DNA of 64,000 nt, from IMG/VR virus record IMGVR_UViG_3300044731_002337, positions 230,774-294,773 of that record. One strand, 5' to 3'. Made by a program: the position numbers and the translations under genes. Under the pieces are notes generated by a model, which made no database searches, was not told where the DNA came from, and was given only the letters and a program-made list of their open reading frames with translations. Positions 1 through 36,340 of this stretch are shown piece after piece (position 1 is the first letter of the stretch; the number at the start of each line of letters is the position of its first letter).

Positions 1-624
1 GAGGGAATATCCCAATATGGAATGAATTGTGGTACATTACCTTATCAATCGCCTCAACGATTAAAGGATGGCAAGTGTTCCAAGGCAGATGATATGTGGG
101 CTTTGGGAGTTATATTTTGGCAGATGCAAAATAAGAGATTACCTTATCCAGATCATTTCGATTGTGTTTTGGATTATCGATTCTTCTGGGCACAAGGAAT
201 TTGTGTAAAGGGTGTCACGTTAAGTGAGATATGTTGGAAGAAGGATGCATGTGTGAAGAGATTGATGGAGCATTTACAAATTTCATGGGTTACCGCAGGT
301 GTGCATGACTATGTTCCCGCAGGTGTGCATGACTATGTTACGCCACAAGATACGATGATGATGATGATGATGAAAAAGAGTAATCATAATAATAATAATA
401 AGACATGGGAGATTACAAGGGAGGAATTGGGTGAAGTGGAAGGAAAAGAGTGGATATGGAAATGGGTAAATAAGGTACAAAATGGATTACATAAACGTGG
501 AGCTACTTACAATCGGAATGAGTTGATAGGTTATGTAAAGCAATGTTTTGAATATATATGGTTAGAAGGTAAAGTGGATCCAAGTATTTTATATCATATG
601 TTATGTATTTCCGATGATGAATAA
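1..624 (+). CDS. Ser/Thr protein kinase, C-terminal part (5' truncated by window edge)
   Basis: CGTLPYQSPQ (GTxxYxxPE-like) and ADDMWALGVIFWQM (subdomain IX); frame is open from base 1. Confidence 0.8.
   Translation, partial: EGISQYGMNCGTLPYQSPQRLKDGKCSKADDMWALGVIFWQMQNKRLPYPDHFDCVLDYRFFWAQGICVKGVTLSEICWKKDACVKRLMEHLQISWVTAGVHDYVPAGVHDYVTPQDTMMMMMMKKSNHNNNNKTWEITREELGEVEGKEWIWKWVNKVQNGLHKRGATYNRNELIGYVKQCFEYIWLEGKVDPSILYHMLCISDDE
291..341 (+). repeat. 2x24-bp direct repeat element, in frame (TAGVHDYVPAGVHDYVT)
   Basis: taccgcaggtgtgcatgactatgttcccgcaggtgtgcatgactatgttac; 48/51 nt identical to 35701-35751. Confidence 0.95.
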
Positions 625-663
625 ATATTGATTTTTCAAAAAGTAAAGTTGTTGTTGTTGTTG

Positions 664-1119
664 ATGGAATCTTTATTTCCTGGGTTGATGGAAAGTGTGT
701 CGGGTGAATCAGAGGAGGCTCATGTAGTATCATTTTATGTAGTACAAGCCTTGTCTAGAATTCATTTTCCAGAACCTAAAACATTAACAAGAGTCGAGGT
801 CGAAGTTATGCAAGGGGAGCCTAGATATCATGTACCATATGAACAGAAAGAGATTCGTCTTTGGTGTGTTCCTGTAGAATTGCAAGTATTTCCACCTAGA
901 ATTATTAGATGCCGATTACCATCGAGTCGTCCTCATAGTACAAATTCCAATACACACCAATTGAGTCATCATCATTCATCGAAACAGTTGGTAGTGAAAC
1001 CATTATCATCTACGGTGACGGATATCTCCCGATTGGGATTTGACATTTCATATCTCCAGTCGTTTGTGTTTATACCTGTGACTCGCTTAGGGTTTGACAC
1101 TACATGTCTTCTTCCTTGA
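664..1119 (+). CDS. hypothetical protein
   Basis: ORF fills the gap between kinase and D5 genes; first ATG at 664; no recognisable motif. Confidence 0.5.
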   Translation: MESLFPGLMESVSGESEEAHVVSFYVVQALSRIHFPEPKTLTRVEVEVMQGEPRYHVPYEQKEIRLWCVPVELQVFPPRIIRCRLPSSRPHSTNSNTHQLSHHHSSKQLVVKPLSSTVTDISRLGFDISYLQSFVFIPVTRLGFDTTCLLP

Positions 1120-3161
1120 TTGAAAATCCAACGGGGCCATGGAAGAATGATCCTCGTTTGGTAGTGAATTGTACTCGTATTGGCGCTGTAAATGATGTGA
1201 TGAACATGATCTATCAACGGCCCTATGTAGAGGAGGAAGTGGAAGCACAATTGGTCACGTTTGCGGATCATCATTGGGAGGAAATGACACGTCACTTGGC
1301 TACTTTCCCCTTAAATGAAGAGAGAACTCAAGCCGAGTTATTAACTTTTTTACAATATTTCCATAAGCTTTTTTGTTTTAATAACAAGGGTGATATGGAG
1401 GCCTTGACACGTATTGGTAAAGTGTATAGTGATACGTTGGCCATGTCATCCAAGTATGAACAATTATATGGACAATTACAATTGGTGGAGACCCATTTAA
1501 CGCGTCAAGGTTTTTTGGATGTCAATACGCAAGTGGGTCGTGAATTGAAATGTATGATTACACGGATTTCCATGGCGTTACGAACCTCGTATGAAGTGAT
1601 TGTGGGGATACGTCTATTGCGTCATTCCAATGATCCTGGTCTACGTAGTGCATTACTTAGTATGACCTCGCAAACATTTAAACCCCCCTCTTCTGAAAAT
1701 CAAGGGGTGGAAAAGCAACCCAGGCAAAAACTATTAGACTTTTATTTGGAATATGCTTTCAATCGACAATATCGAAAGGCTGGTAATTATTTGTACAAGC
1801 CAGTGTTCAATGAGGAGGGCATATTCGTGCATGCCTATGAGAGACATCAATCGATTATGCAATTCATTTGTGAAGCATGTTTCCCAGAGACACAAAACGC
1901 TTTTTGGTTCAATATCCTGTCAAGCAACGTAGGGGTCATTCCTTATTTACATAGTATGTTAAAGGAATTGAAGTTTGAGAGGTTACCTATTTTGGAGTAC
2001 AATCGAGACATTTTTGCGTTTACTAATGGGTTGTATGTATTGCCATTGAGACAATTTTTTTGGTTCCGGCCACCACCAGGATGTCGTTCTACTAATGAGT
2101 TGAGTGGTAATTTGACGGCAATCAAGTATCACAAGTTGTTTTTCGATGATGTACGTATGACTCAGGAATTTATGGGTGGTGATTTACGTAATCCGTTGAA
2201 TATTACAATGCCCAATATCAAGTCCATCTTCACACTACAAGGATTTACAGACAGGGAAATGTTTTTCATCTTTGCGTTATTGGGACGATTGTTTCATATG
2301 GGTAAACGATTTGATAATTGGAGTGTTTTCCCATGGTTTTTGGGTATTGGTGCCACGGGTAAGAGTACGATTCTCAAGTTGATTGCCATGATGTATAACC
2401 CTGAAGACATTGGATATTTACCAAATAAGCCATCTGAAGCTTTCTCCTTGGCTACTGCTTATACTGGTCTATTGTTCTTGGCATTGGATATAGATAATCA
2501 CTTTTCATTGGATCAAGCTACGTTTTGCTCGATTGTCTCTCATGAACAAGTGGTGGTCAATGTCAAGAATAAGGATCAGATTTCGATGGAGTGGTTATCA
2601 CATGGGGCGGCCGCAAGTAATTTGATGCCTTCCAAATTTCATAGTGTGGGCAATAACTTGTCTCGTCGTATCATCAATATCGAGTTTGCGTACATTGTGA
2701 AGAATATGAATCCCAATCTCTTTGAAATGTGTCTACGAGAGATTCCAGAGTTTCTGCATGTGTGCAATTCATGTTACTTGATGGCGGCCGAGCGTTTCCA
2801 CAATGTGTCGTTCAAATCGGTGTTGCCTCAAAAATTCAAGGAAATGGAGAAGAGGTGTTTACGCGAGATGAATCCTGTTGACTCGTTTGTGAGTGAAGCC
2901 TGTATTGTATTGAGTATGGATGAGAAGAAGAGTATGAGTAAGAATGATTTTACCAAGGCTTACAAATGGTGGGTGGCTCAAAACAATTTACCACAGCAAC
3001 AATGTAAACTCAATAGTGTGGCCTTCAGCTCGTTACGTACGTATGGAGTCCATGAAGTGAATCATGGTCATGGTGGAGCCATTTTGGAAAACATTATTCT
3101 TCAACCCCACGTGATACCTCTCATTGCGGAATGGGAACAAAGTAAAGGTGGTGGTGGCTAA
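1104..3161 (+). CDS. D5-like SF3 helicase/ATPase (no AEP domain recognised)
   Basis: FAFTNGLY (D5_N-like), ALLGRLF...DNWSVFPWFLGIGATGKST Walker A, AAASN motif C, NLSRRI arginine finger. Confidence 0.9.
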   Translation: MSSSLIENPTGPWKNDPRLVVNCTRIGAVNDVMNMIYQRPYVEEEVEAQLVTFADHHWEEMTRHLATFPLNEERTQAELLTFLQYFHKLFCFNNKGDMEALTRIGKVYSDTLAMSSKYEQLYGQLQLVETHLTRQGFLDVNTQVGRELKCMITRISMALRTSYEVIVGIRLLRHSNDPGLRSALLSMTSQTFKPPSSENQGVEKQPRQKLLDFYLEYAFNRQYRKAGNYLYKPVFNEEGIFVHAYERHQSIMQFICEACFPETQNAFWFNILSSNVGVIPYLHSMLKELKFERLPILEYNRDIFAFTNGLYVLPLRQFFWFRPPPGCRSTNELSGNLTAIKYHKLFFDDVRMTQEFMGGDLRNPLNITMPNIKSIFTLQGFTDREMFFIFALLGRLFHMGKRFDNWSVFPWFLGIGATGKSTILKLIAMMYNPEDIGYLPNKPSEAFSLATAYTGLLFLALDIDNHFSLDQATFCSIVSHEQVVVNVKNKDQISMEWLSHGAAASNLMPSKFHSVGNNLSRRIINIEFAYIVKNMNPNLFEMCLREIPEFLHVCNSCYLMAAERFHNVSFKSVLPQKFKEMEKRCLREMNPVDSFVSEACIVLSMDEKKSMSKNDFTKAYKWWVAQNNLPQQQCKLNSVAFSSLRTYGVHEVNHGHGGAILENIILQPHVIPLIAEWEQSKGGGG

Positions 3162-3186
3162 TAGTATATTATATTTGTTTTTATTC

Positions 3187-4923: not shown

Positions 4924-4982
4924 AGTTTTTTTTTTTATTCAATAAAGAAATATAAAACAAAAAAAGTAAAGGGGATTACGTG

Positions 4983-7325: not shown

Positions 7326-7757
7326 ATGGAAAAACATAATGTGAATAAAATGTGTATTCGAAATAATCCGGGTTCGAAAGAGATGATTCAGTCTGAAAAG
7401 AGGGTTCCGATTACCTTGTTACCTGCGAATACGAGTGATGCTATAGGTCGGTTAAAGAGTAATCCTAAATTTGAGAGTCTAGTTTTACGTACCCAGTTTG
7501 CGGCAGATACAAATACATTAAAGCATGTAAAGCCGATGATGTCATTGTATACGAATTATCCGAAAGAGGTAAAATTATTGTTTTCCGATTCGGCACTAGA
7601 ACGAGTGAAGCGGATAATTCAGGAGTATCCCTTGTTGGAGAGAAATGTCCACGCCGCGAGAGATAGGGATTGTGAACAAGTACCTGAAGGGGGGAGAAGC
7701 GGGTGGAGGAGGAGGAGGATACTTCCCCAAATTTATTATGCGGGGGGTTCTAGCTAG
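7326..7757 (+). CDS. hypothetical protein
   Basis: ORF preceded by an A11 tract; overlaps the next ORF. Confidence 0.55.
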   Translation: MEKHNVNKMCIRNNPGSKEMIQSEKRVPITLLPANTSDAIGRLKSNPKFESLVLRTQFAADTNTLKHVKPMMSLYTNYPKEVKLLFSDSALERVKRIIQEYPLLERNVHAARDRDCEQVPEGGRSGWRRRRILPQIYYAGGSS

Positions 7758-8523
7758 TCTCTTTCATGATGAGACAAGAGTAGCTAAAATCTTTCATGAG
7801 TTACGCAAGGCAGAATCGGGTGATACATGGATGGTGGAAATGCTCATGAACTTGAAAATTATGAACTTTGGAGGAACTTTATCCCCTTTCATACTCAAGT
7901 GTGAAAGCATACACGAAGAAGAACGTGTCATTGTATTTCCTTATTGCCATCAAATAGATATCATTCACTATATGGAGCGTAACCGTTGTTCGGAAGAGCT
8001 CCTGTTGAAATGGGTGGACCAAATGATTGATGCAGTGTATTGTTTACATGAACATCTCGAGATTGCGCATATGGACTTATCATTGGAAAACTTCATGTTG
8101 ACTCAAGATTTGGAAATACGTTTGGGGGATTTTGCACAAGCGTGTCATGCGAATTCAGTGTTAACTATTACGGGGTCAATTGGCAAGAAATCGTATGGGG
8201 CATATGAGATATTTGCGCGAGATACGGTGTATAATCCAAAGACTTGTGATATGTGGTCATTAGGCATTTGCATCTTTGCCATGTTTTTCAATTGCCTATT
8301 ATGGTTTTCTCATCGCGACTCTCGATTTATCGGTTTTATTCATAATCAAGGCCAGTTTTGGGAAAAGTTGGAAGAAGCAATCAAACAAGTAAAAGGGGAA
8401 CAACAAGATGTGATCACTTTCAAGATCCTCAAGTTGGTGAAAAGACTTGTGGTGTTGAATCCGGATGAACGCATGACCATTAAGGAACTAAAACAAGAAA
8501 TGATGACGATGATAATAAAATAA
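7645..8523 (+). CDS. Ser/Thr protein kinase (divergent)
   Basis: RVAKIF, HMDLSLENFML, GDFAQA, GKKSYGAYE, CDMWSLGI, NPDERMTI; start uncertain. Confidence 0.88.
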   Translation: MSTPREIGIVNKYLKGGEAGGGGGGYFPKFIMRGVLASLFHDETRVAKIFHELRKAESGDTWMVEMLMNLKIMNFGGTLSPFILKCESIHEEERVIVFPYCHQIDIIHYMERNRCSEELLLKWVDQMIDAVYCLHEHLEIAHMDLSLENFMLTQDLEIRLGDFAQACHANSVLTITGSIGKKSYGAYEIFARDTVYNPKTCDMWSLGICIFAMFFNCLLWFSHRDSRFIGFIHNQGQFWEKLEEAIKQVKGEQQDVITFKILKLVKRLVVLNPDERMTIKELKQEMMTMIIK

Positions 8524-9262: not shown

Positions 9263-10123
9263 TTATGACTCATTTATTTGTAATTGGTTCCACATGTATT
9301 TGGCGATGTCTACATTGGGTGAGGTTGGGTTTTCTATAATGAATTCTTGTAGGGTAAGAGTCATGGCGAGTCGATCTAGGCCGTGTTGATGATTCTGTTC
9401 GCTGATATGATAGGGAGAGCCAAAATCAATGAGTTTCAGTGTGAATGAGGGGGTTTTGAGGTAGCCAATATTAGATAGACACAAATCATGGTGAAATAGT
9501 TTGTGGTGAGACATGTAGTGGAGCATATCTTGAAGTTGTTTGACAATCATATCCGCTTCCGTTTGCGTGATGGGTGAGGAAGAGTGAAGTAGTAAGTCTT
9601 CTAGGGTTCCATCCAATTGTTGCATGAGGATGCAGTAATAAGTGGTTTGCAAATATGTAATGGTAAAGTGTTCAATGGGTACAACGCCCAGATTATGATG
9701 GTAAAATAGTCGCATATGGTCGACTTCATTTTGGTAATATAAAGAGTTGGTGGAGATTTTGAGAACAACTGGTTGACATTGAAAGAGGACAAGAAAGGCT
9801 ACACCAAAGCATCCATGATTAAGGTATTGGATAAATTGGAACTTGATAGGGGACAAGAGGGAGATGGATCGAATATGGTCAATGATGAAAAGTTGTTGTT
9901 GAGTAATGTGCGATTGGACGTTAGGGAGAAATTCATTAGCAATGTCCATGAACGTTTGTGTGGTGAGCCGATGATAAGTTGGATCATGGGTTGGTTGAGA
10001 TTGATAGAAACGGATAGCTGTATCTAGAATATAACGATTGCCATATGATAGATGTACATATCCTGGTCTGGAAGTAATTTGTGCAATCAGATCTTGTTTC
10101 ATTTTGTTCAATGTACAAGACAT
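9263..10123 (-). CDS. protein kinase-like protein with short C-lobe
   Basis: GCFGVAF Gly-loop, VVLKIS, NEV, HHDLCLSNIGY, KLIDFG. Confidence 0.85.
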   Translation of the reverse strand: MSCTLNKMKQDLIAQITSRPGYVHLSYGNRYILDTAIRFYQSQPTHDPTYHRLTTQTFMDIANEFLPNVQSHITQQQLFIIDHIRSISLLSPIKFQFIQYLNHGCFGVAFLVLFQCQPVVLKISTNSLYYQNEVDHMRLFYHHNLGVVPIEHFTITYLQTTYYCILMQQLDGTLEDLLLHSSSPITQTEADMIVKQLQDMLHYMSHHKLFHHDLCLSNIGYLKTPSFTLKLIDFGSPYHISEQNHQHGLDRLAMTLTLQEFIIENPTSPNVDIAKYMWNQLQINES

Positions 10124-13231: not shown

Positions 13232-14407
13232 ATGATAGTAGGATATACGACGGGGACTTTTGATTACCTGCATGAAGGACATATTCGTATTTTACGCGGT
13301 ATGAGAAAGTTGTGTGATCGTCTGATAGTAGGATTGACCACTGATGAATTGGCGGTGAAGCAAAAGAGGGCAACTATCATGTCATTTGATCATCGTCGGG
13401 TATTGTTGGAGAGTTGTAAGTGGGTATCTCATGTAGTGGAGCATCATGGGGAGTCTAAAATTGTAGCGTATGAAAAGTTACGGTTTCATAAATTATTTAT
13501 TGGGGATGATTATTTTGGATCTCGAGAGTATCTTGAGGTTAATGAAAAGTATCCTGAAGTAGAGATTGTGGTGATTCCAAGGACTTCCAATGTGTGTACA
13601 TCGCAGTTATGGGAGAGTTTAAATAAACGTGTGTTACATGACATGAGTATTATGCATATGGGTGTAGGATCAAGTGTCATTCGTCGCATTGGTGAACGTT
13701 TGGTGACCAAGACAATTAATTTAGGGTACACTGAAGTCTATGGTGAGCGAACAGCCAATGTATATCATTTTCCTATTCCTGTACCTCGTAATTGGGCCAG
13801 AGTGAATACTCCAGCAGTACATCCAAATTATCCTGGAGTGAATGGATTCCGGGAGATTGATGGAGGTGATATGTGGCATGGAAAGTCATGGTATCCTTAT
13901 GATGAGCATCGTGTCATTTATCAATCACCTCAAAAGTGGAGTTGTGTCTATCCTTTGGAGGAGAAGAAGCGTCCAAGTATGGTAGTGGAATTGATCGGTC
14001 GTTATGGTGGTGATACATTAGCACATTGGGTGGAATTCAAGTATCATCGTGATGAATTTCGAAGGTTGATTAAGCAAGTTTTAAGGATCATTATGGAGGA
14101 ATTGGCGCCTCAAGATTTTGTGCATGGTGATGTGCATTGTAGGAATGTGTTGGTGGATGGTCGTGGACAAGTCAGTTTAATTGATTTTGGGTGGTGCACG
14201 CATGGATCGTTTGTGATGCAGAGTGATGAACGTGAGGAGCATCAAAGTCGAGTGAAGGATTTATTTGATGTGATGCATTTTCGAGATAGTGTGGAAAAGT
14301 TATTGGTGGAGGAATTGGGATTAAGTTCGTTGTGGGGCGTTCATGCGACGGATTTTCTGACGTTTTCGAATGTACACAATGATGATAGGGAGCCACATGC
14401 AGAGTAG
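13232..14407 (+). CDS. cytidylyltransferase (TagD/ECT-like) fused to a kinase-like phosphotransferase domain
   Basis: GYTTGTFDYLHEGH (HxGH), LIVGLTTD, IGDDY, PRTSNVCTS; C-terminal FVHGDVHCRNVLV...LIDFGW. Confidence 0.85.
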   Translation: MIVGYTTGTFDYLHEGHIRILRGMRKLCDRLIVGLTTDELAVKQKRATIMSFDHRRVLLESCKWVSHVVEHHGESKIVAYEKLRFHKLFIGDDYFGSREYLEVNEKYPEVEIVVIPRTSNVCTSQLWESLNKRVLHDMSIMHMGVGSSVIRRIGERLVTKTINLGYTEVYGERTANVYHFPIPVPRNWARVNTPAVHPNYPGVNGFREIDGGDMWHGKSWYPYDEHRVIYQSPQKWSCVYPLEEKKRPSMVVELIGRYGGDTLAHWVEFKYHRDEFRRLIKQVLRIIMEELAPQDFVHGDVHCRNVLVDGRGQVSLIDFGWCTHGSFVMQSDEREEHQSRVKDLFDVMHFRDSVEKLLVEELGLSSLWGVHATDFLTFSNVHNDDREPHAE

Positions 14408-15730: not shown

Positions 15731-18700
15731 TTATTTTGGAAAAGGTGTTTTGGGTCGTGATGGTTGTGGAATAACAGGAGGAGGAGGAGGAGGAGGTGAT
15801 GTATTGAGTAAGGCTTTGATGGCACGTACAGTATTATACCACATCGGTTGATCTTGTTCATAGAAAGGTTGTGTTTTAATGTAATCTTGATACTCTTGTA
15901 AACGTGTAGCAAGTTCAACAAAACGAAGAGTGAGTAATGGTTTCTGTGGGTTATTCAAATCTCTCATGATGGCATTAGGTAAGGCTGAAATAGGTTTACC
16001 TTGTAGTTTGAATGTGATGAAATAGATGGTGTAGAAGCTGAGTAATAGGGGAGATAGATTGAATTTGGGGCAGGTAATAACATTGCGAGCTTCTAAAAGT
16101 TGATCCCCTTCAATTTTGGAGCCATTGATCCATTCCACAGTGATACCTTCGCCGAAAGCTGTACTCAAGGCGGCATCCAAGGCATCATTGCTGAATATGT
16201 CCATGCCTAATTTACCAAGGAGATCAACGCGATAGAGTTTCTTGGTTTGGGGTTCATAGATGAGAATGTTGGTATGTTTGGCGTAAGTAGAGGCGCTACT
16301 GACTTTCAAGAAAGCTATGCAGAATTGTTTGGTACTGGATTTCATATGGGCGATGAACTGTTCATGACGGTGACCAAGTGAAGTACCATTCCATACCATG
16401 AAGAATTCCAGATTATTGGTAGGAATAGCTACATCAACACTATGTACCTTGTCAAGTAAAGTTCGAAGAATACTATAGAGAGTAATAAGCATAAATTGAT
16501 TGTTACCTGAAAAGCCTTCATGAAGTCGTTTCATAGTATCACAAATGGTTTGAAGTTCTTTTGGTGTATATTCACGTTTGATTTGCATTTCTGTTTGATT
16601 GAATTCTAGGATTTGACGGTCAATGCCTGAGAAAACGGATGACATACTTGAGATATCAAACATGCCAGCCACGGTATCTGCTGTATCATAGTAACGGAAC
16701 GCTCCATTTGATCCTTCATGAAGTAGGATGAGGTCTGAGGAGATAACTTCTTCTTTATTGGTGGCATGCCATTTGATTTTATAGGTATCATTTTGCACAT
16801 CTTTGGATAGGATGACGGCTTGATTGCCCTGATCACCAATGACATCGTTAACATTGAATGCGGGGACGACAGCTTTGTGGGGTACGAGAACGGGGAAACT
16901 ATCTTCAGGTTTCATGGGGAAAGCCATTCCTTCATAGTAGATGACGTTATGACGATTGATACGGCGGTGTACTTTGAAAGGAATTTGGATATTGTTGCGA
17001 TCTAAATGTTTATTACCTTCATAATCTACGGCATTTCGTTTGGCAATGTTAAAGACGACACGACATAGATTTTCGCCTTTGCATCGTTCAAGATGTAATG
17101 TCTCTCGATGAACTTTTTCAAAAATGAATTGGCCATCACTGGAGGTGGAGCATAAGAGGACGATGCGGGTCATGGCGCCGAATCCATGATAGAATTTTTG
17201 GTTCTTGGATTTACACATGCGGGCAATACGACTTGAAGTTTGTTCAAATTCAGTGCGGGTACGACATGGTTCAATCATATACAATATAGGCACATCATAC
17301 AAATCAATACCTTCACGATTGTTGGCATCATAGATAAATAATTTGATTCGTTCACCATGAGGATTTAGTTTTGTATCATTGAAATTGTCACGAATACCTT
17401 TAGCCCGTGGATCCTCTGGTGCTTCATTTTCTTCCTCTTCTTGTTCTTCTTGTATTGCTGCTGCCTTCCTATTCTTCTTATTCTTAGGGGCGGCGGCAGG
17501 AGCTGCTTTTTTATTATTGTTTTTGGGGGCAGGATCCTTTTGTAGAGATGAGATATATACGAATGAGATTTTGGTGGGGTCAGGTGAAGCGGATAGATCA
17601 TTTGTCATATCTTGAAACCATTCAGGGAAACAATGGAGAGCCCATACAATCATTTCGGAACCATATAAATCCTTTGCTGCATCAGAGGTAGTATTACAAG
17701 TAAGAGAATATTTTTGGTTGGGATTTTTTTGATGCTCTTTACGAATATGGGTCATGAATTGGTATACGACAGGACAAAACATTTCAATCCAATGTTGTTT
17801 GGGTACATCATAATTTGGCCTATTCGTTATATTATCTGCACGTTTACCAATGATATTGGCTTCACCATACACAACACCATCTTTAACTTCCTGTTTCTTC
17901 CTTCCAGCTCCCCCCTTCTTTGGTTTGGCTGGTACTTCTCCTTCTACTTCTTCTTGTACTTGTTGTTTCTTATTCTTTCTGGGTTTCCTTTCTGGTTTGG
18001 GTTTAGTTACTATTACTTCATCTTCTACTTCATCTTCTGGTACTTGTTGTTTCTTATTCTTTCTTGGTTTCCTTTCTGGTTTGGGTTTAGGTACTGATTG
18101 TTTCAAGTCTACATTCTTGTTATTCTTCCTTGTTTGAAGTTTGTAATTTTTGGCATGAGCGATGGGTGGTTCATCAAGGAGTAGAGGAGGTTGATGTAGT
18201 GCGAGCCCCATTTCTTCATGTGTAAGTTGGAATGGGTTAACGATACCTTGACGTAATTGTTTGGTGAGTTGTTCATCTGTCTTCTTACTGTAAGTACGTG
18301 TAACGCCATCATAATTGAAGAAATCGAGTGAATCTTTACGGTGAAGAATTTCCTCATTGGTGATCTGGGTATCTGTCTTGTATTGGGAATAAATGGTCTC
18401 TCGAAGACGCTTGATGGATTCAGGGGTAGCATCAAATCGGGTGCGTGAGAATTCGGCGTACCAGCGTTCAATGACATCTTGGTGTGGTAGGTGATTAGAC
18501 GAATCATACATCATGGAGAGTTGGAAAAAGCGTTGGTAGATATCTTCATGATCAACACCCTGAGCTTGTAATGTCTTGACGTGATGGAGAATCTGTTGAT
18601 AGTGAATTTGGAAAAGGGGAACACTAATGACTTCTGAAATGACTTTTTGGGCAAACTTGGTTGGATCTTTATTTGCTGGAGCATAGGTAGTGTTATGATC

Positions 18701-21127
18701 TAAGGCGCGTTCAAGCTTCAATAATGATTCAGGGGTTAATTGGTATGTATCTTTATTGATGTAGTCGTCCCATTTGTGATCACGAACGAGTGGGAGGCGA
18801 TTTTGTGGTTCTCTATGGAGTAAGTTTACGATCCAAAATAAGTCATTAGGGTCATTGTTCATAATGGTGGCAGAGACAGGGAAAAACCGGAAATCAATAT
18901 CTTGACCGGCAAAGATAGTGCTATTGTTGGTGAGTCTTTGCTGATATGCCTGGTAAAGGACATAGGCTAACAAGTCACGCCCACGTATCTTATCATCATC
19001 AATAAAACGGTATTTGATGTAATCGGGACCGTAAATATCCTGTTGTGTGAAACCTGGATGTTCAAAGATTTCGTGCCATGGACTTTTATCGCTTCGACTT
19101 AGGATGTTGTGTGCCTCATCAATGACAAGACATAGTTTACCTGTAATCTTTTTGGCCTTGGTTTGGGCAGCTTGTGTAATGTGTCGATTGGGGAGTTTTA
19201 ATTTGGCGGCTAGAGCATTCACGATTTCCTTGTATACACTGGTATCCGTCTTGGTTAAGCCAATGCCATATGTTTTCTTCAAATCTGCAAATACATTCTG
19301 ATTGTTAGCGTCGGTCATACGTGCAATTTCCTTGTCACGTAACTGGTTGGCTTCTTCTTCCGTTTTACCGTTACTGAGGGCATTGGTACGAACTAGGTCT
19401 AGCTTTTTGCGAGCAGCAACAGAGCACATATCTTTGATGTAGCCTTCCCAGAGTTGAGTGCGTGATTGGGAGTTGGGGGTGACCCAGATAAGTTCGTATT
19501 GATGGTGTTGGAAATTGTTGCTGATGAGATTGGTGACTTTACATGTTTTGCCGGCGCCAGTGGAATCCATGATGAGTAAGCCAGCCGATTCAGAGGTGCG
19601 ATCATATTGGTTGATGACTTCATATTGATGAGGTTCGAATTTAAACCATTTACCTTCCCATGAACATTTCATTTCGGTAAGATTTTTAGAATCAATGGCT
19701 TCTTTAGGTTTCACAAAATCAATATCTGCCTCCTTCTTATCATATCCAAAGGCTTGGTCGATCACATAGTTGGTATCGTGGTATTCCAACTTATAAATGG
19801 CAAATACCCAAGATGGAGATTTACGATCATGTTTCTCATAAGGAATAATGCTTCGACTAAGTTTAGGTTTCAATCGAGCAAATTGAGTTTCATCCATGAT
19901 TACTGCGACTTGGCCGGTATTGTCATCAATCGCTACGTATTTGGCCCGGGCATGTCTAGCCATAGCAACACCCCTTTTGAATCGTTCCACATTTGATAAG
20001 CCCCGTAGTTCCATACGATCCGCATATTTTTCAATCGATATGGTAGAGCGAATTTGGCCACCCAAGTAGTAGTGAAATTCGGTAGCGTGAGGTAAATGTG
20101 CTAATGCATTATCTGCTTTTGCCTTGACATGAAATACTTGGGCATCTGAAACGTTGATGTAGCTATCCGTTTCATATAATCGGTTTTGAAAATACAATAA
20201 TGGTTCAGCGAAATACCCTTGAAATATCTCGTGTTGCGAGTTGGTAAATACTTCAGCGGGTGCAAAATGTTTTAAAGCTGGGTTTTGTTTGGGTTGTGCA
20301 ATGGCGTGAGCTTTGGCAAGTTCTTCGTCTGTGGGAATTTCCATGAGTGGGCCGGGAAGAGGTAATGGTCGTAAAGGTGCTGGTGGTGGTGGTATAGCTT
20401 GTGATGCCGCCTCATTAGGTAAAGGTACCGATTTAGGTCCAAACAACTTTGCAAAAAATCCACGACCCTTCTTCTTCTTTTGACCTAATGTATCTGATTT
20501 CGGTCGAACTGCATTCATCTGTGGAGAAGGTATCACTTCTGTCTTGGGTAATACATTAGGTTTCACGGCTGGTAAAGGCGAAGGTATTACTTCTGTTTTG
20601 GGCAATACATTAGGCTTCACGGATGGTAAAGGAGTTTCTGCTTTGGTGACTGAGGAATAAGATACAAGCTTAGGTTGCTGTGGTGGTGGTGGTGGATTCT
20701 CTAATTGAGTTGATGAGGAGGAATAAGCTACAAGTTTAGTTGGTTTTTGTGGTGGTGGATTTTCTAATTGGGTTGATGAGGAGGAATAAGATACAAGTTT
20801 AGGTTGCTGCGGTGGTTTTTGTTGTGGTGGATTTTCTAATTGGGTTGATGAGGAAACAGAAGATGCATAAGGAACAAGTTTATTTAATGGAGCTTGGGGA
20901 ATAGGCAAGGTAGGATTTGTTGGAGCCATTGTTTGCATTTTGTTGAGTTGGGGACCTTTAGTTCTTCTTCCTTCTTCTTCTTCTCTTTCTAATGGTGGGG
21001 TTATTACTTCATTGGATGGTAAAGGTAAAGGTGCTACAGGTGGTTGTGGTGGTGGTCGTGGTGGTTTTGTGGTCACCTTGGGTTTCATTCCAGCCAGTAA
21101 TTGGGGTTTATAATTTTGTTGCAACAT
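15731..21127 (-). CDS. giant multidomain SF2 helicase (D6/D11-like) with Pro-rich N-terminus, Tudor-like and peptidase-like C-terminal domains
   Basis: GLLIMDSTGAGKT, LVIDEAHN, VSAT, REGIDLYDV, EQTSSRIARMC. Confidence 0.8.
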   Translation of the reverse strand: MLQQNYKPQLLAGMKPKVTTKPPRPPPQPPVAPLPLPSNEVITPPLEREEEEGRRTKGPQLNKMQTMAPTNPTLPIPQAPLNKLVPYASSVSSSTQLENPPQQKPPQQPKLVSYSSSSTQLENPPPQKPTKLVAYSSSSTQLENPPPPPQQPKLVSYSSVTKAETPLPSVKPNVLPKTEVIPSPLPAVKPNVLPKTEVIPSPQMNAVRPKSDTLGQKKKKGRGFFAKLFGPKSVPLPNEAASQAIPPPPAPLRPLPLPGPLMEIPTDEELAKAHAIAQPKQNPALKHFAPAEVFTNSQHEIFQGYFAEPLLYFQNRLYETDSYINVSDAQVFHVKAKADNALAHLPHATEFHYYLGGQIRSTISIEKYADRMELRGLSNVERFKRGVAMARHARAKYVAIDDNTGQVAVIMDETQFARLKPKLSRSIIPYEKHDRKSPSWVFAIYKLEYHDTNYVIDQAFGYDKKEADIDFVKPKEAIDSKNLTEMKCSWEGKWFKFEPHQYEVINQYDRTSESAGLLIMDSTGAGKTCKVTNLISNNFQHHQYELIWVTPNSQSRTQLWEGYIKDMCSVAARKKLDLVRTNALSNGKTEEEANQLRDKEIARMTDANNQNVFADLKKTYGIGLTKTDTSVYKEIVNALAAKLKLPNRHITQAAQTKAKKITGKLCLVIDEAHNILSRSDKSPWHEIFEHPGFTQQDIYGPDYIKYRFIDDDKIRGRDLLAYVLYQAYQQRLTNNSTIFAGQDIDFRFFPVSATIMNNDPNDLFWIVNLLHREPQNRLPLVRDHKWDDYINKDTYQLTPESLLKLERALDHNTTYAPANKDPTKFAQKVISEVISVPLFQIHYQQILHHVKTLQAQGVDHEDIYQRFFQLSMMYDSSNHLPHQDVIERWYAEFSRTRFDATPESIKRLRETIYSQYKTDTQITNEEILHRKDSLDFFNYDGVTRTYSKKTDEQLTKQLRQGIVNPFQLTHEEMGLALHQPPLLLDEPPIAHAKNYKLQTRKNNKNVDLKQSVPKPKPERKPRKNKKQQVPEDEVEDEVIVTKPKPERKPRKNKKQQVQEEVEGEVPAKPKKGGAGRKKQEVKDGVVYGEANIIGKRADNITNRPNYDVPKQHWIEMFCPVVYQFMTHIRKEHQKNPNQKYSLTCNTTSDAAKDLYGSEMIVWALHCFPEWFQDMTNDLSASPDPTKISFVYISSLQKDPAPKNNNKKAAPAAAPKNKKNRKAAAIQEEQEEEENEAPEDPRAKGIRDNFNDTKLNPHGERIKLFIYDANNREGIDLYDVPILYMIEPCRTRTEFEQTSSRIARMCKSKNQKFYHGFGAMTRIVLLCSTSSDGQFIFEKVHRETLHLERCKGENLCRVVFNIAKRNAVDYEGNKHLDRNNIQIPFKVHRRINRHNVIYYEGMAFPMKPEDSFPVLVPHKAVVPAFNVNDVIGDQGNQAVILSKDVQNDTYKIKWHATNKEEVISSDLILLHEGSNGAFRYYDTADTVAGMFDISSMSSVFSGIDRQILEFNQTEMQIKREYTPKELQTICDTMKRLHEGFSGNNQFMLITLYSILRTLLDKVHSVDVAIPTNNLEFFMVWNGTSLGHRHEQFIAHMKSSTKQFCIAFLKVSSASTYAKHTNILIYEPQTKKLYRVDLLGKLGMDIFSNDALDAALSTAFGEGITVEWINGSKIEGDQLLEARNVITCPKFNLSPLLLSFYTIYFITFKLQGKPISALPNAIMRDLNNPQKPLLTLRFVELATRLQEYQDYIKTQPFYEQDQPMWYNTVRAIKALLNTSPPPPPPPVIPQPSRPKTPFPK
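17950..18095 (-). repeat. in-frame duplication KPKPERKPRKNKKQQV x2
   Basis: Two near-identical copies of ttgttgtttcttattctttctNggtttcctttctggtttgggtttag. Confidence 0.9.
20525..20880 (-). repeat. in-frame repeats (VKPNVLPKTEVIPSP x2; KLVxY..SSSTQLENPP x3)
   Basis: Visible tandem peptide and DNA repeats in the helicase N-terminus. Confidence 0.85.
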
Positions 21128-29562: not shown

Positions 29563-29640
29563 GTTTTATAGGTGAATGTGATTATTTTTTCTTTTTATTT
29601 GGTGAAATTTAATAATCATAATAGGGAAAAAGAAAAAAAA

Positions 29641-30708: not shown

Positions 30709-30718
30709 TAATAAAAAA

Positions 30719-31684: not shown

Positions 31685-31709
31685 TGAGGAAACAAAAAGG
31701 AGAGAAAAT

Positions 31710-31922: not shown

Positions 31923-31940
31923 ATAAATAAATAAATAAGG

Positions 31941-32195: not shown

Positions 32196-32230
32196 AATAT
32201 ACTACTACCAAAAAAAATAAAAGAAGAAAA

Positions 32231-33727
32231 ATGCCAGGTGATGGTGTAATTGGAAGTATATGTGTGCTAGTCGTTTATATCATTATCTTAGGCGTTAGTT
32301 TATCATGGCCATATAAACAAAATAAAGCTGCCAATGTGAATAATGAAACGAATAAAAGGTCAAAACATAGAACCGGCATCACAAAATCACAAAACAATAC
32401 AGAACAAACAACTAATGCCAATCAAACAGGAACAACTGGACAACCTACACCAGTGAGAAAACCAGAAAGAGAAGTTACAAACTTAACAAATATAGGTACA
32501 CCAATCAGACCACAAATACCGCAAACGCCACACGCAGTAGTTTCAAGACCAGCCAACATGATAAGTACACGATTGGGTCAATCACCGAGAACGGCTCCAA
32601 TGTCAGCCCATGCATCACGTACACCAATCAAACCACAAATTCCGCAGACGCCACAAACAGTTCCAAAATCAGCCGGCATGAGAGGTGCATTAATGAAAGA
32701 ACCACATACAACACCTCCAAGGTCAATCGACGAAGTCAGTACCACGAGTGAGGATAGTGATGATAGTGGGGTTAGTGAGTATGAGGAAGTCCGGGGTGGC
32801 GATGCTGCTACACCCGCGTTAGAGTTACCAAATGAACCCATAGGTAGCGGTTTGACGAAAGAAGAGGAAGAATATTTAGAAACAGAACAAAAGTGGGCTT
32901 GGGAAAGCATTGGCAAAACACGTGATAATATTAGAAATGTGTTTAATCGGTGGTACCTGGCAATACCAAAAGATACACAAAACTTAAAAACAGCTGTGGA
33001 AGAAGCGATTCAAAAAGAAAACACGCTCAAGTTCGGATTAAACTGGTTTGGACAACTTGACCCTGAAAAGCCTAGAGAAACATTAAACAACGCTATCATA
33101 GCATGGAACGATTTTGTGGGTACGAGCTGGGCAGGTCTTTCAAAATACGAAGCGGCAACTCATGTGGAAGTACTGAAAGAAAAGATAAAACAAAATATTA
33201 ACAAACTACTTATTGCAGGGTTGCGTAAAGTAAATGATGTAGATATAACGATAAAAGAAGAGGTTTATTATACCTTTGAAAAATATCAAGCTCTGATGAA
33301 TGAGGATAATATTGCAGAATTAGTGGAGCAGCACAAAGTAATTTCAAAGTTACGAATAGCGTTAACTCCACTTTTTAATTCGGTAAAAGATAACAATGAC
33401 GCACCGTTTGATTGGGCTAAACTAACCCTGAAAGACATTGAGGAACAAGTGACAGCGTACTTTGAAAGCAAGTTCATGAAAATAAGAGATTATGGTGATG
33501 AAGTTGGATTGTTAAGACGAGTTTGTCGGACAATAATAGATCAGTTCAATATAACAGTAACAGACAATACTATTAATGCGGAATATGTAATTACAAAATT
33601 TATCGAAATAATAAACAAGTGGAAAAATTCTAGAAAGAATAATAATAATAGTTGGAACCAGAATGAATTTATGGAATTTGTTGACCCCAGCCGAATATCC
33701 GGAAGGAAACGAAGAGCGAACAAATAA
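32231..33727 (+). CDS. membrane-anchored protein, tandem family member 1
   Basis: TM VIGS..VVYIIILGVSLSWPYK; disordered linker; shared domain (EYL...W...AV..AI..EN...FGL.WF). Confidence 0.8.
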   Translation: MPGDGVIGSICVLVVYIIILGVSLSWPYKQNKAANVNNETNKRSKHRTGITKSQNNTEQTTNANQTGTTGQPTPVRKPEREVTNLTNIGTPIRPQIPQTPHAVVSRPANMISTRLGQSPRTAPMSAHASRTPIKPQIPQTPQTVPKSAGMRGALMKEPHTTPPRSIDEVSTTSEDSDDSGVSEYEEVRGGDAATPALELPNEPIGSGLTKEEEEYLETEQKWAWESIGKTRDNIRNVFNRWYLAIPKDTQNLKTAVEEAIQKENTLKFGLNWFGQLDPEKPRETLNNAIIAWNDFVGTSWAGLSKYEAATHVEVLKEKIKQNINKLLIAGLRKVNDVDITIKEEVYYTFEKYQALMNEDNIAELVEQHKVISKLRIALTPLFNSVKDNNDAPFDWAKLTLKDIEEQVTAYFESKFMKIRDYGDEVGLLRRVCRTIIDQFNITVTDNTINAEYVITKFIEIINKWKNSRKNNNNSWNQNEFMEFVDPSRISGRKRRANK

Positions 33728-33800
33728 CAATTAAAGATAGGATATTCTTCAATAAGTATAAATTAAATGGCGAAATAGTAGTAATACAATAAAAATAAAA

Positions 33801-34748
33801 ATGCAAGATGGCAGTGTGATTGGAAGTCTAATTACGATAGTAGTGTATGTAATTATCTTGGGTATCAGTTTATCGTGGCCATACAAGCATGAGGCCAATG
33901 CACAAGTTGTCGAAAGCATGGGGGAAAATAATATAGAAACATCTACTAAACATGCCGCACAATCAAATAACGTTAAAGAATCTACATCAAGAATTGACGC
34001 TCCATATTTAACCAAAAAACGAAAACAACCAGACTATTCTAATGTCAAACCTCATTCCCCAATAATACCCAATTTACATCAAAAAAGTGAACCAGAGGAA
34101 AAGTCAGAATTATCAACGATAGTGGAGGAAGAAGAAACAGGAGACTCGGGGCCATGGGATGAGGAGAGTGATGCTGAAGAAGAATTATTTCATACAGTCA
34201 GCACAGTAGTGTTGGCACCGCCAGAAATTAGTACTGATGAAGAAGATGGGCGGGAGATCGATGCGAATGGTTATACCAAGAAAGAGAGGGACTATTTACA
34301 ACCATATAATACACAAATATGGGATGTAGTAGAATTGTGGAAATGGAAAAAGTGGTTTATAAAAAGGTTTGAGGATTACTACTTGACACTGGGAAAATTC
34401 AAGAATAGTGATTTAGTCTTGGCGGTAAAATCGGCAATAACAGAAGAAAACAAACAAACTTTCGGGTTGAAATGGTTTAAAAATCGTGATCTTAATACCA
34501 ATGATATTTCGGAATTAACTGAAGCTAAGCGGGAGTGGCAGAAATTTATGGATGAAAGAAGGATGAAAAAGAACCAACAATACAAAAACTATCCACCCGA
34601 TACTCACGCAAATCTTCTTCTCCAGGAGATTAAAGAACGAATTAATGAGAAAATATGGAATATTACAGATAAATTGGGAAAAATACAAGAAACTGATTAC
34701 GATACCAGGGAAAAATATGAAACATTAATGAAAAGATTGACGGAATAA
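33801..34748 (+). CDS. membrane-anchored protein, tandem family member 2
   Basis: TM VIGS..VVYVIILGISLSWPYK; LAVKSAITEENKQTFGLKWF. Confidence 0.8.
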   Translation: MQDGSVIGSLITIVVYVIILGISLSWPYKHEANAQVVESMGENNIETSTKHAAQSNNVKESTSRIDAPYLTKKRKQPDYSNVKPHSPIIPNLHQKSEPEEKSELSTIVEEEETGDSGPWDEESDAEEELFHTVSTVVLAPPEISTDEEDGREIDANGYTKKERDYLQPYNTQIWDVVELWKWKKWFIKRFEDYYLTLGKFKNSDLVLAVKSAITEENKQTFGLKWFKNRDLNTNDISELTEAKREWQKFMDERRMKKNQQYKNYPPDTHANLLLQEIKERINEKIWNITDKLGKIQETDYDTREKYETLMKRLTE

Positions 34749-34780
34749 ATTGACAAGATGAAGAAAAAAAGTAAACAACT

Positions 34781-36340
34781 ATGAATTATGGTGCAATAGT
34801 TATGATTCTCTTATACATTGTCATAGTACTGGCCATGCACTGGAATGTGGATGGAGTTCTACTACAAAGACAACGCATGAAAGGTGTAACATTATTAACG
34901 CCCAGAGATCAAGTGCCACAATCAAAGACCGGCAAGCAAGTAGCACAATCAAAGACCGGCAAGCAAGTAGCACAATCAAAGACTAGGAAACGAGTACCAC
35001 AATCAGAGACTAGAAATCGAGTACTAAAATTAGAGACTAGACATCAGGTAGTATCAAGACAATATGAAAAAAGGAGTGAAATATCAGAAGATTATGTTAA
35101 ATTTTTTTGTATTAAAAATGGAGTATTATGGGATACATATCAAGTGGAAACACGTAGGGACGTTTTGAAGGCATTTCGTGAGTATATACTTCCAATACCA
35201 GAGACTGAAGATTTACGTGAGATCGAACATTTTATTCGAGAAAAATTGGATACGACTCTGGGGTGGTTTAAGGTAAAATCTGAATCATTTAATAATGTAG
35301 TAGAGGAATTATATACTGTCATTGCAAAGTATACCGATGTTATGAACACAGTCATGGATCCTTTTCCATATCAATGGAACCCTGAAGATATAAATGCATA
35401 TAGAGTATGGTTACAAGAATGGGCTAAAGATAGAAACATTAATCCTATACCTAATTCATATGAAGAGTTTTGCGATATACGAGGTACTGCACAGATCAAG
35501 GCATCAAGAGGGACACCAGCACCGATAATACCAAAAGAAATAACACCGGAACGAAAGAGAGTATCACGCACAGAGAAACCATATAATACTGATACAGATA
35601 TTGTCGAGTTGATAACTACCCATGAATCCAGTAGTGTCAAGAGCGATTCAAGCTCAGGCTCAGGCTCAGATTCAGATACATTTCATGAAGTTCTATCTGG
35701 TACCGCAGGTTTGCATGACAATGTTCCCGCAGGTGTGCATGACAATGTTACCTCTTCGAATGAATCAGAAGTTACCACTTCAAGTGGATCAGAGAAAGGA
35801 CTGCAAAAGGCGGCTGAAACAATCTCTAAACCCAAATCTGAAGATGATATGTCTGAGGAGGAATTGAACTATTTGAAGTTTGAGAATGAGTTATGGGAAG
35901 GGGAGGATTTCGGTAAGAAAAAGTCGCGATTTTGGAAGGAGTTTCCACAAAAATATCTAGTTCTGACTCATCCACGTCCCTTTTTTCCTACTTCAAAACA
36001 GATAGACGTAGCAGTGGGAAATGCAATAGAGAGTGAAAAATCAAACCTTTTGGGATTAGGTTTATTTGGAAAATTGGATGCAGATAATATTTTAACATTG
36101 TTACAGTGTATTCGTGAGTATAAGAGGTTTATAAAATATTGGCAAAGAGATTGGTGGTGGTTTAACAAATATAATTATCGACCTGAAACACATGACAAAG
36201 ATTTGGAGAAGGTTGTTGGATGTAAACATTATAAAGATAAATCTAGTTATGTCCAATATACACCAGAATATCTAGCATGTGTTGCAAAAGTTAGCAAGGC
36301 AATTACGTGGTTTCAAAAGGAGCATCCAGCAAATTTATAA
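34781..36340 (+). CDS. membrane-anchored protein, tandem family member 3 (shared domain apparently twice)
   Basis: N-terminal TM; VAVGNAIESEKSNLLGLGLFGKLD and YRPETH match members 1 and 2. Confidence 0.8.
   Translation: MNYGAIVMILLYIVIVLAMHWNVDGVLLQRQRMKGVTLLTPRDQVPQSKTGKQVAQSKTGKQVAQSKTRKRVPQSETRNRVLKLETRHQVVSRQYEKRSEISEDYVKFFCIKNGVLWDTYQVETRRDVLKAFREYILPIPETEDLREIEHFIREKLDTTLGWFKVKSESFNNVVEELYTVIAKYTDVMNTVMDPFPYQWNPEDINAYRVWLQEWAKDRNINPIPNSYEEFCDIRGTAQIKASRGTPAPIIPKEITPERKRVSRTEKPYNTDTDIVELITTHESSSVKSDSSSGSGSDSDTFHEVLSGTAGLHDNVPAGVHDNVTSSNESEVTTSSGSEKGLQKAAETISKPKSEDDMSEEELNYLKFENELWEGEDFGKKKSRFWKEFPQKYLVLTHPRPFFPTSKQIDVAVGNAIESEKSNLLGLGLFGKLDADNILTLLQCIREYKRFIKYWQRDWWWFNKYNYRPETHDKDLEKVVGCKHYKDKSSYVQYTPEYLACVAKVSKAITWFQKEHPANL
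34910..35044 (+). repeat. 27-bp in-frame tandem repeat, about 5 units (QVAQSKTGK-like)
   Basis: caagtagcacaatcaaagaccggcaag and progressively diverged copies. Confidence 0.9.
35701..35751 (+). repeat. 2x24-bp direct repeat element, in frame (TAGLHDNVPAGVHDNVT)
   Basis: 48/51 nt identical to 291-341. Confidence 0.95.

What the first reader, a model, noticed from the sequence alone, without database searches (positions are those of the whole stretch)
291..35751. Same 2x24-bp element inserted in frame in two unrelated genes 35 kb apart
Seen: 291-341 (kinase C-terminal linker) and 35701-35751 (linker of a membrane-family protein) are 48/51 nt identical. Both are two 24-bp units read in the same frame (AGVHDYVP / AGLHDNVP). 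The first copy is bounded by a GTTAC direct repeat (289-293 and 337-341), the second by GGTAC/GTTAC. The flanking sequences are unrelated. Inference: a small mobile or gene-converted coding repeat tolerated in disordered linkers, analogous in concept to Rickettsia palindromic elements, or a dispersed protein-binding DNA site.
Basis: seen in the sequence. Interest (0 to 1): 0.78.

Follow-up and report, generated by a model that had tools for sequence, protein, structure and literature searches.

The report
Dispersed in-frame 24-bp repeat family
The two matching 48-bp inserts belong to a family of short 24-bp tandem repeats found at 14 or more places in an uncultured lake giant virus, inside unrelated genes in either orientation and in four different reading frames, so the family is copied around as DNA and is not kept for the peptide it encodes.

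Summary
Window 292-339 and 35702-35749 each hold two 24-bp units, 48/51 identical, with 0 expected by chance.

The window is the last 64 kb of a 294,773-bp Nucleocytoviricota contig from lake water. That genome carries two unit types, A (ACCGCAGGTTTGCATGACGATGTT) and B (ACCTCTTCGAATGAACCAGAAGTT). They share only the GTT|ACC junction. Together they occur at 14 or more loci, as 1 to 12 units, pure or mixed.

- **Coding context:** at least 10 loci lie inside unrelated ORFs (a kinase, ankyrin proteins, membrane proteins and others), in both orientations.
- **Reading frames:** all four stop-free frames are used. The only array whose period is not a multiple of 3 (23 bp) is non-coding.
- **Boundaries:** arrays are n x 24 + 5 bp and are bounded by GTTAC.
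- **Relatives:** orthologous kinases in three relatives lack the insert. A related virus carries A units (92-96% identical) in non-orthologous genes.
- **Assembly support:** independent metagenome assemblies span the junctions.
- **Structure:** the arrays show no hairpin potential.

Best reading: a selfish or neutral dispersed minisatellite. It is copied between sites by microhomology-guided templated insertion or gene conversion, expanded by slippage, and filtered by selection for intact frames. A role as a DNA-binding site, or insertion by an enzyme, is not excluded.

The parts
1..624 (+). 3' part of a Ser/Thr protein kinase gene (host gene of array 1). The array lies in the linker between the kinase domain and a conserved C-terminal domain.
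   Evidence: Pfam Pkinase match. Alignment with three full-length orthologues at 51-53% identity.
289..341 (+). Array 1: GTT + two A units (292-315 and 316-339) + AC. Read as TAGVHDYV / PAGVHDYV.
   Evidence: Absent from the orthologous kinases in L014, L015 and L016.
34781..36340 (+). Host gene of array 2: a 519-aa ORF with an N-terminal hydrophobic anchor and low-complexity linkers. No detectable homologue.
   Evidence: Both protein searches return only the protein itself. The gene in the same position in a relative is not homologous.
35699..35749 (+). Array 2, A part: GGT + two A units (35702-35725 and 35726-35749). Read as TAGLHDNV / PAGVHDNV.
   Evidence: Spanned without differences by contigs of runs X1, X2 and X3.
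35750..35797 (+). Array 2, B part: one B unit (35750-35773, read as TSSNESEV) followed by a degenerate B-like unit (35774-35797).
   Evidence: (TRF row 35747-35793).
62828..62859 (-). Solitary B unit (62831-62854), preceded by the last 5-6 nt of an A unit and followed by ACC. It lies in the 180-bp spacer between the divergent genes 62349-62741 (-) and 62921-63985 (+, ankyrin).
   Evidence: the repeat finder I6: 91% complementary over 32 nt to 35745-35776.

Best explanation
A selfish or neutral dispersed minisatellite of a giant virus. Two 24-bp units (A and B) share only the GTT|ACC junction and spread as DNA. In the proposed mechanism, a segment of an existing array (one to a few units) is copied into a new site that offers a GTTAC-like microhomology. 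This happens by template switching during replication or repair, or by ectopic gene conversion, and leaves the structure GTTAC-[units]-GTTAC. The seeded array then grows, shrinks and homogenises locally by slippage or unequal exchange. About 90% of the genome is coding, so most insertions land in genes. Only insertions that keep the frame survive: a period that is a multiple of 3, read in one of the four stop-free frames, and located in a linker, loop or terminus. The survivors add short, probably disordered, 8-residue modules to unrelated proteins. SHOWN: the family acts at the DNA level; it is dispersed; insertions are absent from orthologues; the boundaries have a constant phase; blocks and hybrid units are shared; the junctions are real. 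INFERRED: the copying mechanism and the neutrality of the insertions.
For: (1) The family has 14 or more loci in one genome, holding 23 A and 32 B units (counts that include the related viruses' copies).
(2) The host ORFs are unrelated: kinase, ankyrin proteins, membrane proteins, a 1571+ aa protein and others.
(3) Both orientations and all four stop-free frames are used: TAGLHDxV, VTSSCKPA, NIVMQTCG, and for B TSSNEPEV, LPLRMNEK, VTSGSFEE. Periods of 24, 27 or 21 bp occur in ORFs. The only 23-bp array has no open frame.
(4) Boundaries have a constant phase. The left flank ends in GTT in 7 of 13 arrays and the right flank starts with AC in 10 of 13.
(5) Multi-unit blocks are shared. The ACC-A / YCC-A dimer occurs in array 1, array 2 and L001. 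The A-A-B order occurs in array 2 and L001. The intergenic copy carries an A tail plus a B unit. L001 has a 21-bp A/B hybrid joined at the shared ATGA.
(6) Units are more alike within arrays than between them, 0.92 against 0.87-0.88.
(7) Three orthologous kinases lack array 1, and L015 has GTGAC (Val-Thr) at the empty site.
(8) A relative whose neighbouring genes are 67-79% identical at protein level carries A units 92-96% identical, in non-orthologous genes.
(9) Independent assemblies span array 2. Depth there rises from 13 to 610, and loose ends show many different flanks.
Against: No copying event was observed and no polymorphic empty site was found within a population. GTTAC is part of the periodic unit, so the apparent 5-bp duplication is not independent proof of insertion. 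The units are far better conserved between diverged viruses than neutral DNA should be, which also fits a constrained DNA function or an enzyme-recognised site. The constant boundary phase is tighter than usually expected from microhomology alone. Unit counts of the long arrays (7 to 12 units) exceed the length of short reads and may be wrong. Only about 40% of the genome was inspected directly; the rest was sampled by pattern matches.
Confidence: 0.55

Rival explanations
1. The units are recognition sites for a sequence-specific DNA-binding protein, for example one involved in genome packaging, replication, chromatin or transcription. On this view they are kept all over the genome by selection on the DNA itself, and the coding frames are incidental.
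For: An invariant core is kept in every context: in A, positions 6-8 (AGG), 13-17 (CATGA) and 21-24 (TGTT), with GCATGAC and CC nearly invariant; in B, ACC, CTTC, AA and GTT. Variation is confined to three positions per unit. Units are 92-96% identical between viruses whose proteins are only 67-79% identical. Three B-type copies lie in intergenic DNA, one of them between divergent promoters.
Against: At least 10 of 14 loci lie inside ORFs, roughly as expected from random landing in a dense genome. Orientation is not consistent. Copy number per locus ranges from 1 to 12. A probable old copy at an orthologous site (L004 3614-3637 against L017) appears to have decayed as fast as its flanks (weak evidence). 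No binding protein is known.
Confidence: 0.15
2. An enzyme-driven mobile cassette. A nuclease, recombinase or transposase acts at GTTAC, for example making a staggered 5-nt cut, and inserts 19-bp cores so that the 5-bp target is duplicated. Repeated insertion into the regenerated target would build tandem and mixed A/B arrays.
For: Arrays are n x 24 + 5 bp with GTTAC at both ends and a constant phase in 11 of 13 arrays. A and B units are interleaved in L001 and in array 2. The empty site in L015 reads GTGAC.
Against: There are no terminal inverted repeats or hairpins. No associated enzyme was identified. GTTACC is not over-represented in the window. Shared multi-unit blocks, and the intergenic copy that starts inside an A unit, argue for copying of array segments and against unit-by-unit insertion.
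Confidence: 0.15
3. Protein-level modules: the repeats are kept because the encoded peptides (AGLHDNVT, TSSNEPEV) have a function, and they spread by exon-shuffling-like recombination.
For: B is mostly read in one frame (TSSNEPEV: array 2, L021, L033b, L181) and resembles Ser/Thr/Glu/Pro-rich linkers.
Against: The same DNA is read in four frames giving unrelated peptides, on both strands, and it also occurs in non-coding DNA. The variable positions change the amino acid and are not wobble positions.
Confidence: 0.05
4. Assembly or chimera artefact of a metagenome assembler at short repeats.
For: Assembly graphs break at these repeats. Several Logan contigs end in the array, and depth there is inflated.
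Against: Contigs from three different samples and studies span array 2 with 0 differences. Array 1 lies inside a 31-kb contig. All arrays in ORFs keep the frame. The IMG/VR contig and the window are identical wherever they overlap.
Confidence: 0.02

Closest known systems
Rickettsia palindromic elements (RPEs; MITE-like selfish DNA in protein-coding genes)
   Same: A repeat family defined at the DNA level, inserted in frame into many unrelated genes and tolerated as extra peptide segments (review PMC10969869).
   Different: RPEs are about 150 bp, palindromic, single-copy at each site, bacterial, and each encodes one conserved peptide. Here the units are 24 bp, non-palindromic, tandem, read in four frames, and found in a giant virus.
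Candida glabrata megasatellites (SHITT / SFFIT motifs)
   Same: Tandem coding motifs recur in non-paralogous genes. Motifs transfer between arrays, with gene duplication and ectopic recombination proposed as mechanisms (PMC2919712).
   Different: Megasatellite motifs are 135 to more than 300 bp, sit in one frame under purifying selection on the peptide, and occur in eukaryotic cell-wall genes. Here units are 24 bp with no conserved frame.
Tandem repeats of Borg extrachromosomal elements (aaTRs)
   Same: Short tandem repeats pervade a giant virus-like genome, both intergenic and within ORFs. [quoted passage not shown]
   Different: Borg repeats are perfect, specific to each locus and 'arise independently'. 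Here a single unit family is dispersed over many loci and shared with a related virus, and units are about 88-92% identical.
Mycobacterial interspersed repetitive units (MIRUs) (from my own knowledge, not checked here)
   Same: A minisatellite family dispersed at tens of loci in one genome, with a variable number of units per locus.
   Different: MIRUs are 46-101 bp, lie in intergenic regions of operons, and are bacterial. They are not read in several frames inside unrelated genes.

Membership tests
RPE / MITE-type elements | Length about 100-150 bp, one copy per site | tested here: not met
   Units are 24 bp and arrays hold 1 to 12 units.
RPE / MITE-type elements | Palindromic structure or terminal inverted repeats | tested here: not met
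   DNA folding of four arrays gives z-scores from -0.83 to +1.70 against shuffles.
RPE / MITE-type elements | In-frame insertion in unrelated ORFs | tested here: met
   At least 10 ORF-embedded arrays in unrelated proteins.
Dispersed minisatellite family (MIRU-like) | Head-to-tail units of 10-100 bp, with the same unit family at many loci | tested here: met
   14 or more loci in one 294.8-kb contig.
Dispersed minisatellite family (MIRU-like) | Unit number varies between strains | tested here: inconclusive
   Logan contigs drop variants. Only the one read-laying run showed no clear length variant at array 2.
Megasatellites | Motif of 135 bp or more, conserved in one reading frame | tested here: not met
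   Units are 24 bp and four frames are used.
Megasatellites | Motifs shared between non-paralogous genes | tested here: met
Borg-type aaTRs | Period divisible by 3 inside ORFs; other periods only outside | tested here: met
   Periods of 24, 27 and 21 bp in ORFs. The 23-bp array L033 13792-13880 has no open frame.
Borg-type aaTRs | Units specific to each locus, arising independently, and perfect | tested here: not met
   The same units occur at many loci, with 0.92 identity within arrays.
Transposable element with target-site duplication | Direct repeat of the target flanking the insert | tested here: inconclusive
   GTTAC lies on both sides in 7 of 13 arrays, and with one mismatch in most others. 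GTTAC is itself part of the periodic unit.
Transposable element with target-site duplication | Cognate transposase, recombinase or nuclease | not tested
   No candidate was identified. The L001 host protein has no Pfam match.
Arrays of protein-binding sites (iteron-like) | Specific binding protein | not testable with these tools
   Needs a pull-down or EMSA experiment.
Arrays of protein-binding sites (iteron-like) | Preference for non-coding or regulatory DNA | tested here: not met
   At least 10 of 14 loci lie inside ORFs.

The most novel reading that the evidence does not exclude
A new kind of site-specific mobile cassette in giant viruses. A 19-bp core plus a regenerated 5-bp GTTAC target would be written by a virus-encoded enzyme into genes and spacers, and would be built to be stop-free in four frames. 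It would thus act as a generator of 8-residue modules in proteins. Alternatively the same units could be a genome-wide DNA signal that the virus maintains.
Probability: 0.12. Interest if true: 0.85.

Novelty: new variant of a known kind. Interest (0 to 1): 0.62.

Why it matters
Selfish DNA that settles inside protein-coding genes without breaking them is rare. It is known mainly from Rickettsia (RPEs) and, as motif jumps, from yeast megasatellites. Here one very short tandem unit family is read in four frames in unrelated giant-virus proteins and is shared with a related virus. This gives a clean natural case in which DNA-level spread can be told apart from protein-level selection. It shows one way giant viruses acquire new linker or disordered segments. 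The constant GTTAC boundary offers a concrete handle for testing templated-insertion mechanisms against enzyme-driven ones. The arrays would also serve as ready-made strain markers for this virus in lake time series.

Tried and rejected
- **Phage database:** a search of the first 3.2 kb found no match.
- **Virus naming:** homologues of D5 and A32 are all unnamed metagenomic proteins. The A32 Atlas search gives only the phylum. The family remains unknown.
- **Assembly GCA_013558295 / JACCDN in papers:** nothing found.
- **Orthologues of the 519-aa host of array 2:** none found by word search or by the exhaustive HMMER search. The gene in the same position in a relative (L196 581-2608) is not homologous. 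It holds a 13-nt stretch identical to the 3' half of an A unit, but the local alignment is not significant.
- **Generic scan GTTACC-N18-GTTACC-N18-GTTAC in viral contigs:** swamped by chance hits and uninformative.
- **GTTACC frequency:** not over-represented in the window.
- **Single 17-18-mer hits in other viral contigs (L005-L013, L018-L060):** single, non-tandem chance matches.
- **Hairpin or palindrome idea:** rejected.
- **Rfam and tRNA scans of the window:** nothing.
- **The 23-bp repeat at 58035-58159:** it contains GGTTACC, but it is local and not part of the family.
- **More distant relatives:** 41 kb at 47-53% identity (L193, L195) and prokaryote genomes hold no A or B units.
- **Closer kinase orthologues in IMG/VR:** only the same contig was returned.
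Full report
**Observation.** Window 291-341 and 35701-35751 are 48/51 identical. Each holds two head-to-tail 24-bp units. A 24-mer search allowing 3 mismatches finds exactly these four units, with 0.00 expected in 100 dinucleotide-preserving shuffles. TRF and the repeat finder report them independently. The frame reads TAGVHDYV in the C-terminal linker of a Ser/Thr kinase, and TAGLHDNV in a 519-aa protein with an N-terminal hydrophobic anchor.

**Genome.** The window is identical to the last 64 kb of IMGVR_UViG_3300044731_002337, a contig of 294,773 bp. The same genome also exists as a 299,086-bp JGI/NCBI contig and is found in lake-water metagenomes. It is a member of the Nucleocytoviricota. 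It encodes an A32-type packaging ATPase (47474-48484), a D5-like primase-helicase (1104-3161) and an SNF2 helicase. It also has at least seven Ser/Thr kinases, ankyrin proteins and an AP-endonuclease-like protein. GC content is 36-40%, and GC skew follows the coding strand. No named relative was found. The nearest proteins are 67-78% identical and come from other metagenomes.

**The family is much larger than two copies.** There are two unit types:
- A = ACCGCAGGTTTGCATGACGATGTT
- B = ACCTCTTCGAATGAACCAGAAGTT

They share only the GTT|ACC junction and an internal ATGA. Pattern scans of the viral collection, followed by mismatch and nhmmer scans of the fetched loci, give these loci in this one genome:

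| Locus | Content |
|---|---|
| window 292-339 | 2 A |
| window 35702-35797 | 2 A + 1 B + a degenerate B |
| window 62831-62854 (-) | 1 B |
| L001 3256-3492 | about 10 mixed A/B units, including a 21-bp A/B hybrid |
| L002 1044-1115 | 3 A |
| L004 3614-3637 | 1 A |
| L021 2014-2181 | 7 B |
| L033 4003-4098 | 4 A |
| L033 14410-14697 | 12 B |
| L055 2001-2096 | 4 B |
| L181 8920-8943 | 1 B |
| L181 1347-1380 | 1.6 B |
| L189 1-107 | a 27-bp B variant, 4 or more units |
| L033 13792-13880 | a 23-bp B derivative, 4 units |

In total I hold 23 A and 32 B units, counts that include the six A units of L191/L192 and the B-like unit of L014. This roughly matches the jump in word depth from 13 to 610 at the repeat in run X1. 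Most copies have therefore probably been found.

**It is a DNA-level entity, not a protein motif.** Both units are stop-free in the same four of six frames. The other two frames are closed by the TGA in ATGA and by the TAA in GGTAAC. Every array that lies in an ORF uses one of the four open frames, and all four are used:
- **A, sense:** TAGLHDxV in the kinase, in the 519-aa protein and in L192.
- **A, antisense frame 1:** VTSSCKPA in L001 and in the loop between two membrane helices in L002.
- **A, antisense frame 2:** NIVMQTCG in L004, in the L033 ankyrin protein and in L191.
- **B, sense:** TSSNEPEV in array 2, L021, the L033b ankyrin protein and the 1571+ aa ORF in L181.
- **B, sense +1:** LPLRMNEK at the C-terminus of the L055 protein.
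- **B, antisense:** VTSGSFEE in L001.

The host proteins are unrelated. Three B-type copies are in non-coding DNA. The only array whose period is not a multiple of three (23 bp) has no open frame at all. The variable positions (A: 10, 19, 20; B: 11, 17, 19) change amino acids and are not wobble positions.

**Anatomy.** Arrays begin and end at a constant phase. The left flank ends in GTT in 7 of 13 arrays, and the right flank begins with AC in 10 of 13. The arrays are therefore n x 24 + 5 bp, bracketed by GTTAC. Units are more alike within arrays (0.92) than between arrays (0.87-0.88), which points to local expansion.

Multi-unit blocks are shared between loci:
- The ACC-A / YCC-A dimer occurs in array 1, array 2 and L001.
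- The A-A-B order occurs in array 2 and L001.
- The intergenic copy at 62828-62859 carries the last 5-6 nt of an A unit in front of its B unit, 91% matched over 32 nt to 35745-35776.
- L001 contains a hybrid unit joined at the ATGA shared by A and B.

Array segments are therefore copied and recombined as blocks. The arrays have no hairpin potential (z from -0.83 to +1.70), and GTTACC is not over-represented in the window.

**Relatives and empty sites.** Contigs of related viruses (L014/L017, L015, L016; D5 70-78% identical) are syntenic with the start of the window. Their kinases are 51-53% identical to ours and lack the 16-residue insert and the adjacent poly-Met and poly-Asn runs. At the empty site L015 reads GTG ACT (Val-Thr, GTNAC).

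A metagenome scan for the A-A junction found only two contigs, both from the JACCDN01 assembly that also holds those relatives:
- **L191:** 2 A units, antisense frame, in a 201-aa ORF, plus a degenerate A unit in a neighbouring paralogue.
- **L192:** 3 A units, sense frame, in a 227-aa ORF.

L191's neighbouring genes are 67-79% identical in protein sequence to genes next to L001 and L021. Its A units are 92-96% identical to ours, yet they sit in non-orthologous genes.

L014/L017 also hold one B-like unit (21/24 matches; nhmmer E = 0.0015) in the orthologue of the L004 gene. It sits at a different position from our A unit. At the position of our A unit, the relative has a 29-bp stretch bounded by GTTAC that is only about 73% similar (and my reading of it). 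This suggests an old, decayed copy, but it is not significant on its own.

More distant relatives (41 kb examined) and prokaryote genomes have no A or B units.

**Reality of the junctions.** Contigs of three runs from different samples and studies span array 2 with no differences:
- X1: 3133 nt
- X2: 870 nt
- X3: 369 nt

Array 1 lies inside a 31-kb contig in X1. Loose ends show many distinct flanks, including a strain with diverged flanks that also carries the array in the kinase. Unit counts of arrays longer than a short read (L021, L033b) remain uncertain.

**Mechanism.** I commit, at about 0.55, to a selfish or neutral dispersed minisatellite:
1. Array segments are copied into new sites by microhomology-guided template switching or ectopic gene conversion at GTTAC-like sequences, which gives GTTAC-[units]-GTTAC.
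2. Arrays then expand and homogenise by slippage.
3. Selection removes every insertion that breaks a frame, so that only multiples of three, in one of the four open frames, in linkers, loops or termini, are seen.

The steps shown and the steps inferred are separated in the explanation section.

Two rivals stay open at about 0.15 each. The first is a conserved DNA-binding signal, favoured by the strong conservation of the units between diverged viruses. The second is an enzyme acting at GTTAC, favoured by the very regular boundaries. A peptide-level function (0.05) and an assembly artefact (0.02) are essentially excluded.

**Comparison with known systems.**
- **Rickettsia palindromic elements** (PMC10969869) work similarly but fail the membership test on length and palindromy.
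- **Candida glabrata megasatellites** (PMC2919712) share the transfer of motifs between non-paralogous genes, but they are 135 bp or longer and conserved in one frame.
- **Borg tandem repeats** (PMC9879509) share the rule that only multiples of three occur in ORFs, and the flanking partial repeats. However, they are locus-specific and perfect.
- **MIRUs** (my own knowledge) are dispersed minisatellites, but intergenic.

I found no description of a dispersed 24-bp family read in four frames in a giant virus. I therefore rate it a new variant of a known kind.

**Caveats.** Only the window and about 90 kb of other pieces of the genome were read directly. The remainder was sampled only through exact-pattern hits, so diverged copies may be missed. 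No population-level empty allele was seen. The taxonomic family of the virus is unknown.

Noticed in passing
window 58035-58159: A perfect 23-bp tandem repeat of 5.4 copies (unit CATCAAGGAGGTTACCTAAATTG) lies between genes 57301-58020 (+) and 58152-59279 (-). It contains GGTTACC but occurs only at this locus in the viral collection.
   Followed up: yes
window 34910-35040: A 27-bp coding tandem repeat of 4.9 copies (QVPQSKTGK-like) lies near the N-terminus of the same 519-aa protein that carries array 2. This ORFan is a mosaic of several different repeats.
   Followed up: partly
window 354-401: (ATG)n and (AAT)n runs encoding MMMMMM and NNNN lie directly downstream of array 1. They too are absent from the three orthologous kinases.
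   Followed up: partly
L017 4260-5279 and L004 3374-4324: The orthologous proteins end in Tyr/Ser/Pro heptad-like repeats (SPSYKPTSPMYCP...), reminiscent of the RNA polymerase II CTD. The relative has many more copies than our virus.
   Followed up: no
window, whole: At least seven Ser/Thr protein kinase genes lie in 64 kb: 1-624, 7645-8523, 9263-10123, 13232-14407 (fused to a cytidylyltransferase-like domain), 48551-49903, 58152-59279 and others.
   Followed up: no
window 1-64000: GC skew is strongly positive where genes are on the + strand and turns negative from about 52 kb, although several long ORFs there are still on the + strand. The window is the terminal 64 kb of the IMG/VR contig (contig 230,774-294,773).
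   Followed up: partly
L196 700-880: The gene in the same position as the array-2 host in a relative has a 39-bp repeat (SEHDVVE-like). It contains GCATGACGTTGTT, identical to the 3' half of an A unit and in the same frame. This may be a trace of the origin of A, or chance (about 0.07 expected in all relative DNA held).
   Followed up: partly
L191 3196-4852: A cluster of three small paralogous ORFs with similar C-terminal ends. Two of them carry A or A-like units in different reading frames (NNVMQTCG against VTRSCDPPV).
   Followed up: partly
window 17949-18112 and 20526-20854: 84-, 54- and 63-bp tandem coding repeats lie inside the 1798-aa helicase-like ORF (15731-21127, - strand). They are local repeats unrelated to A and B.
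   Followed up: no
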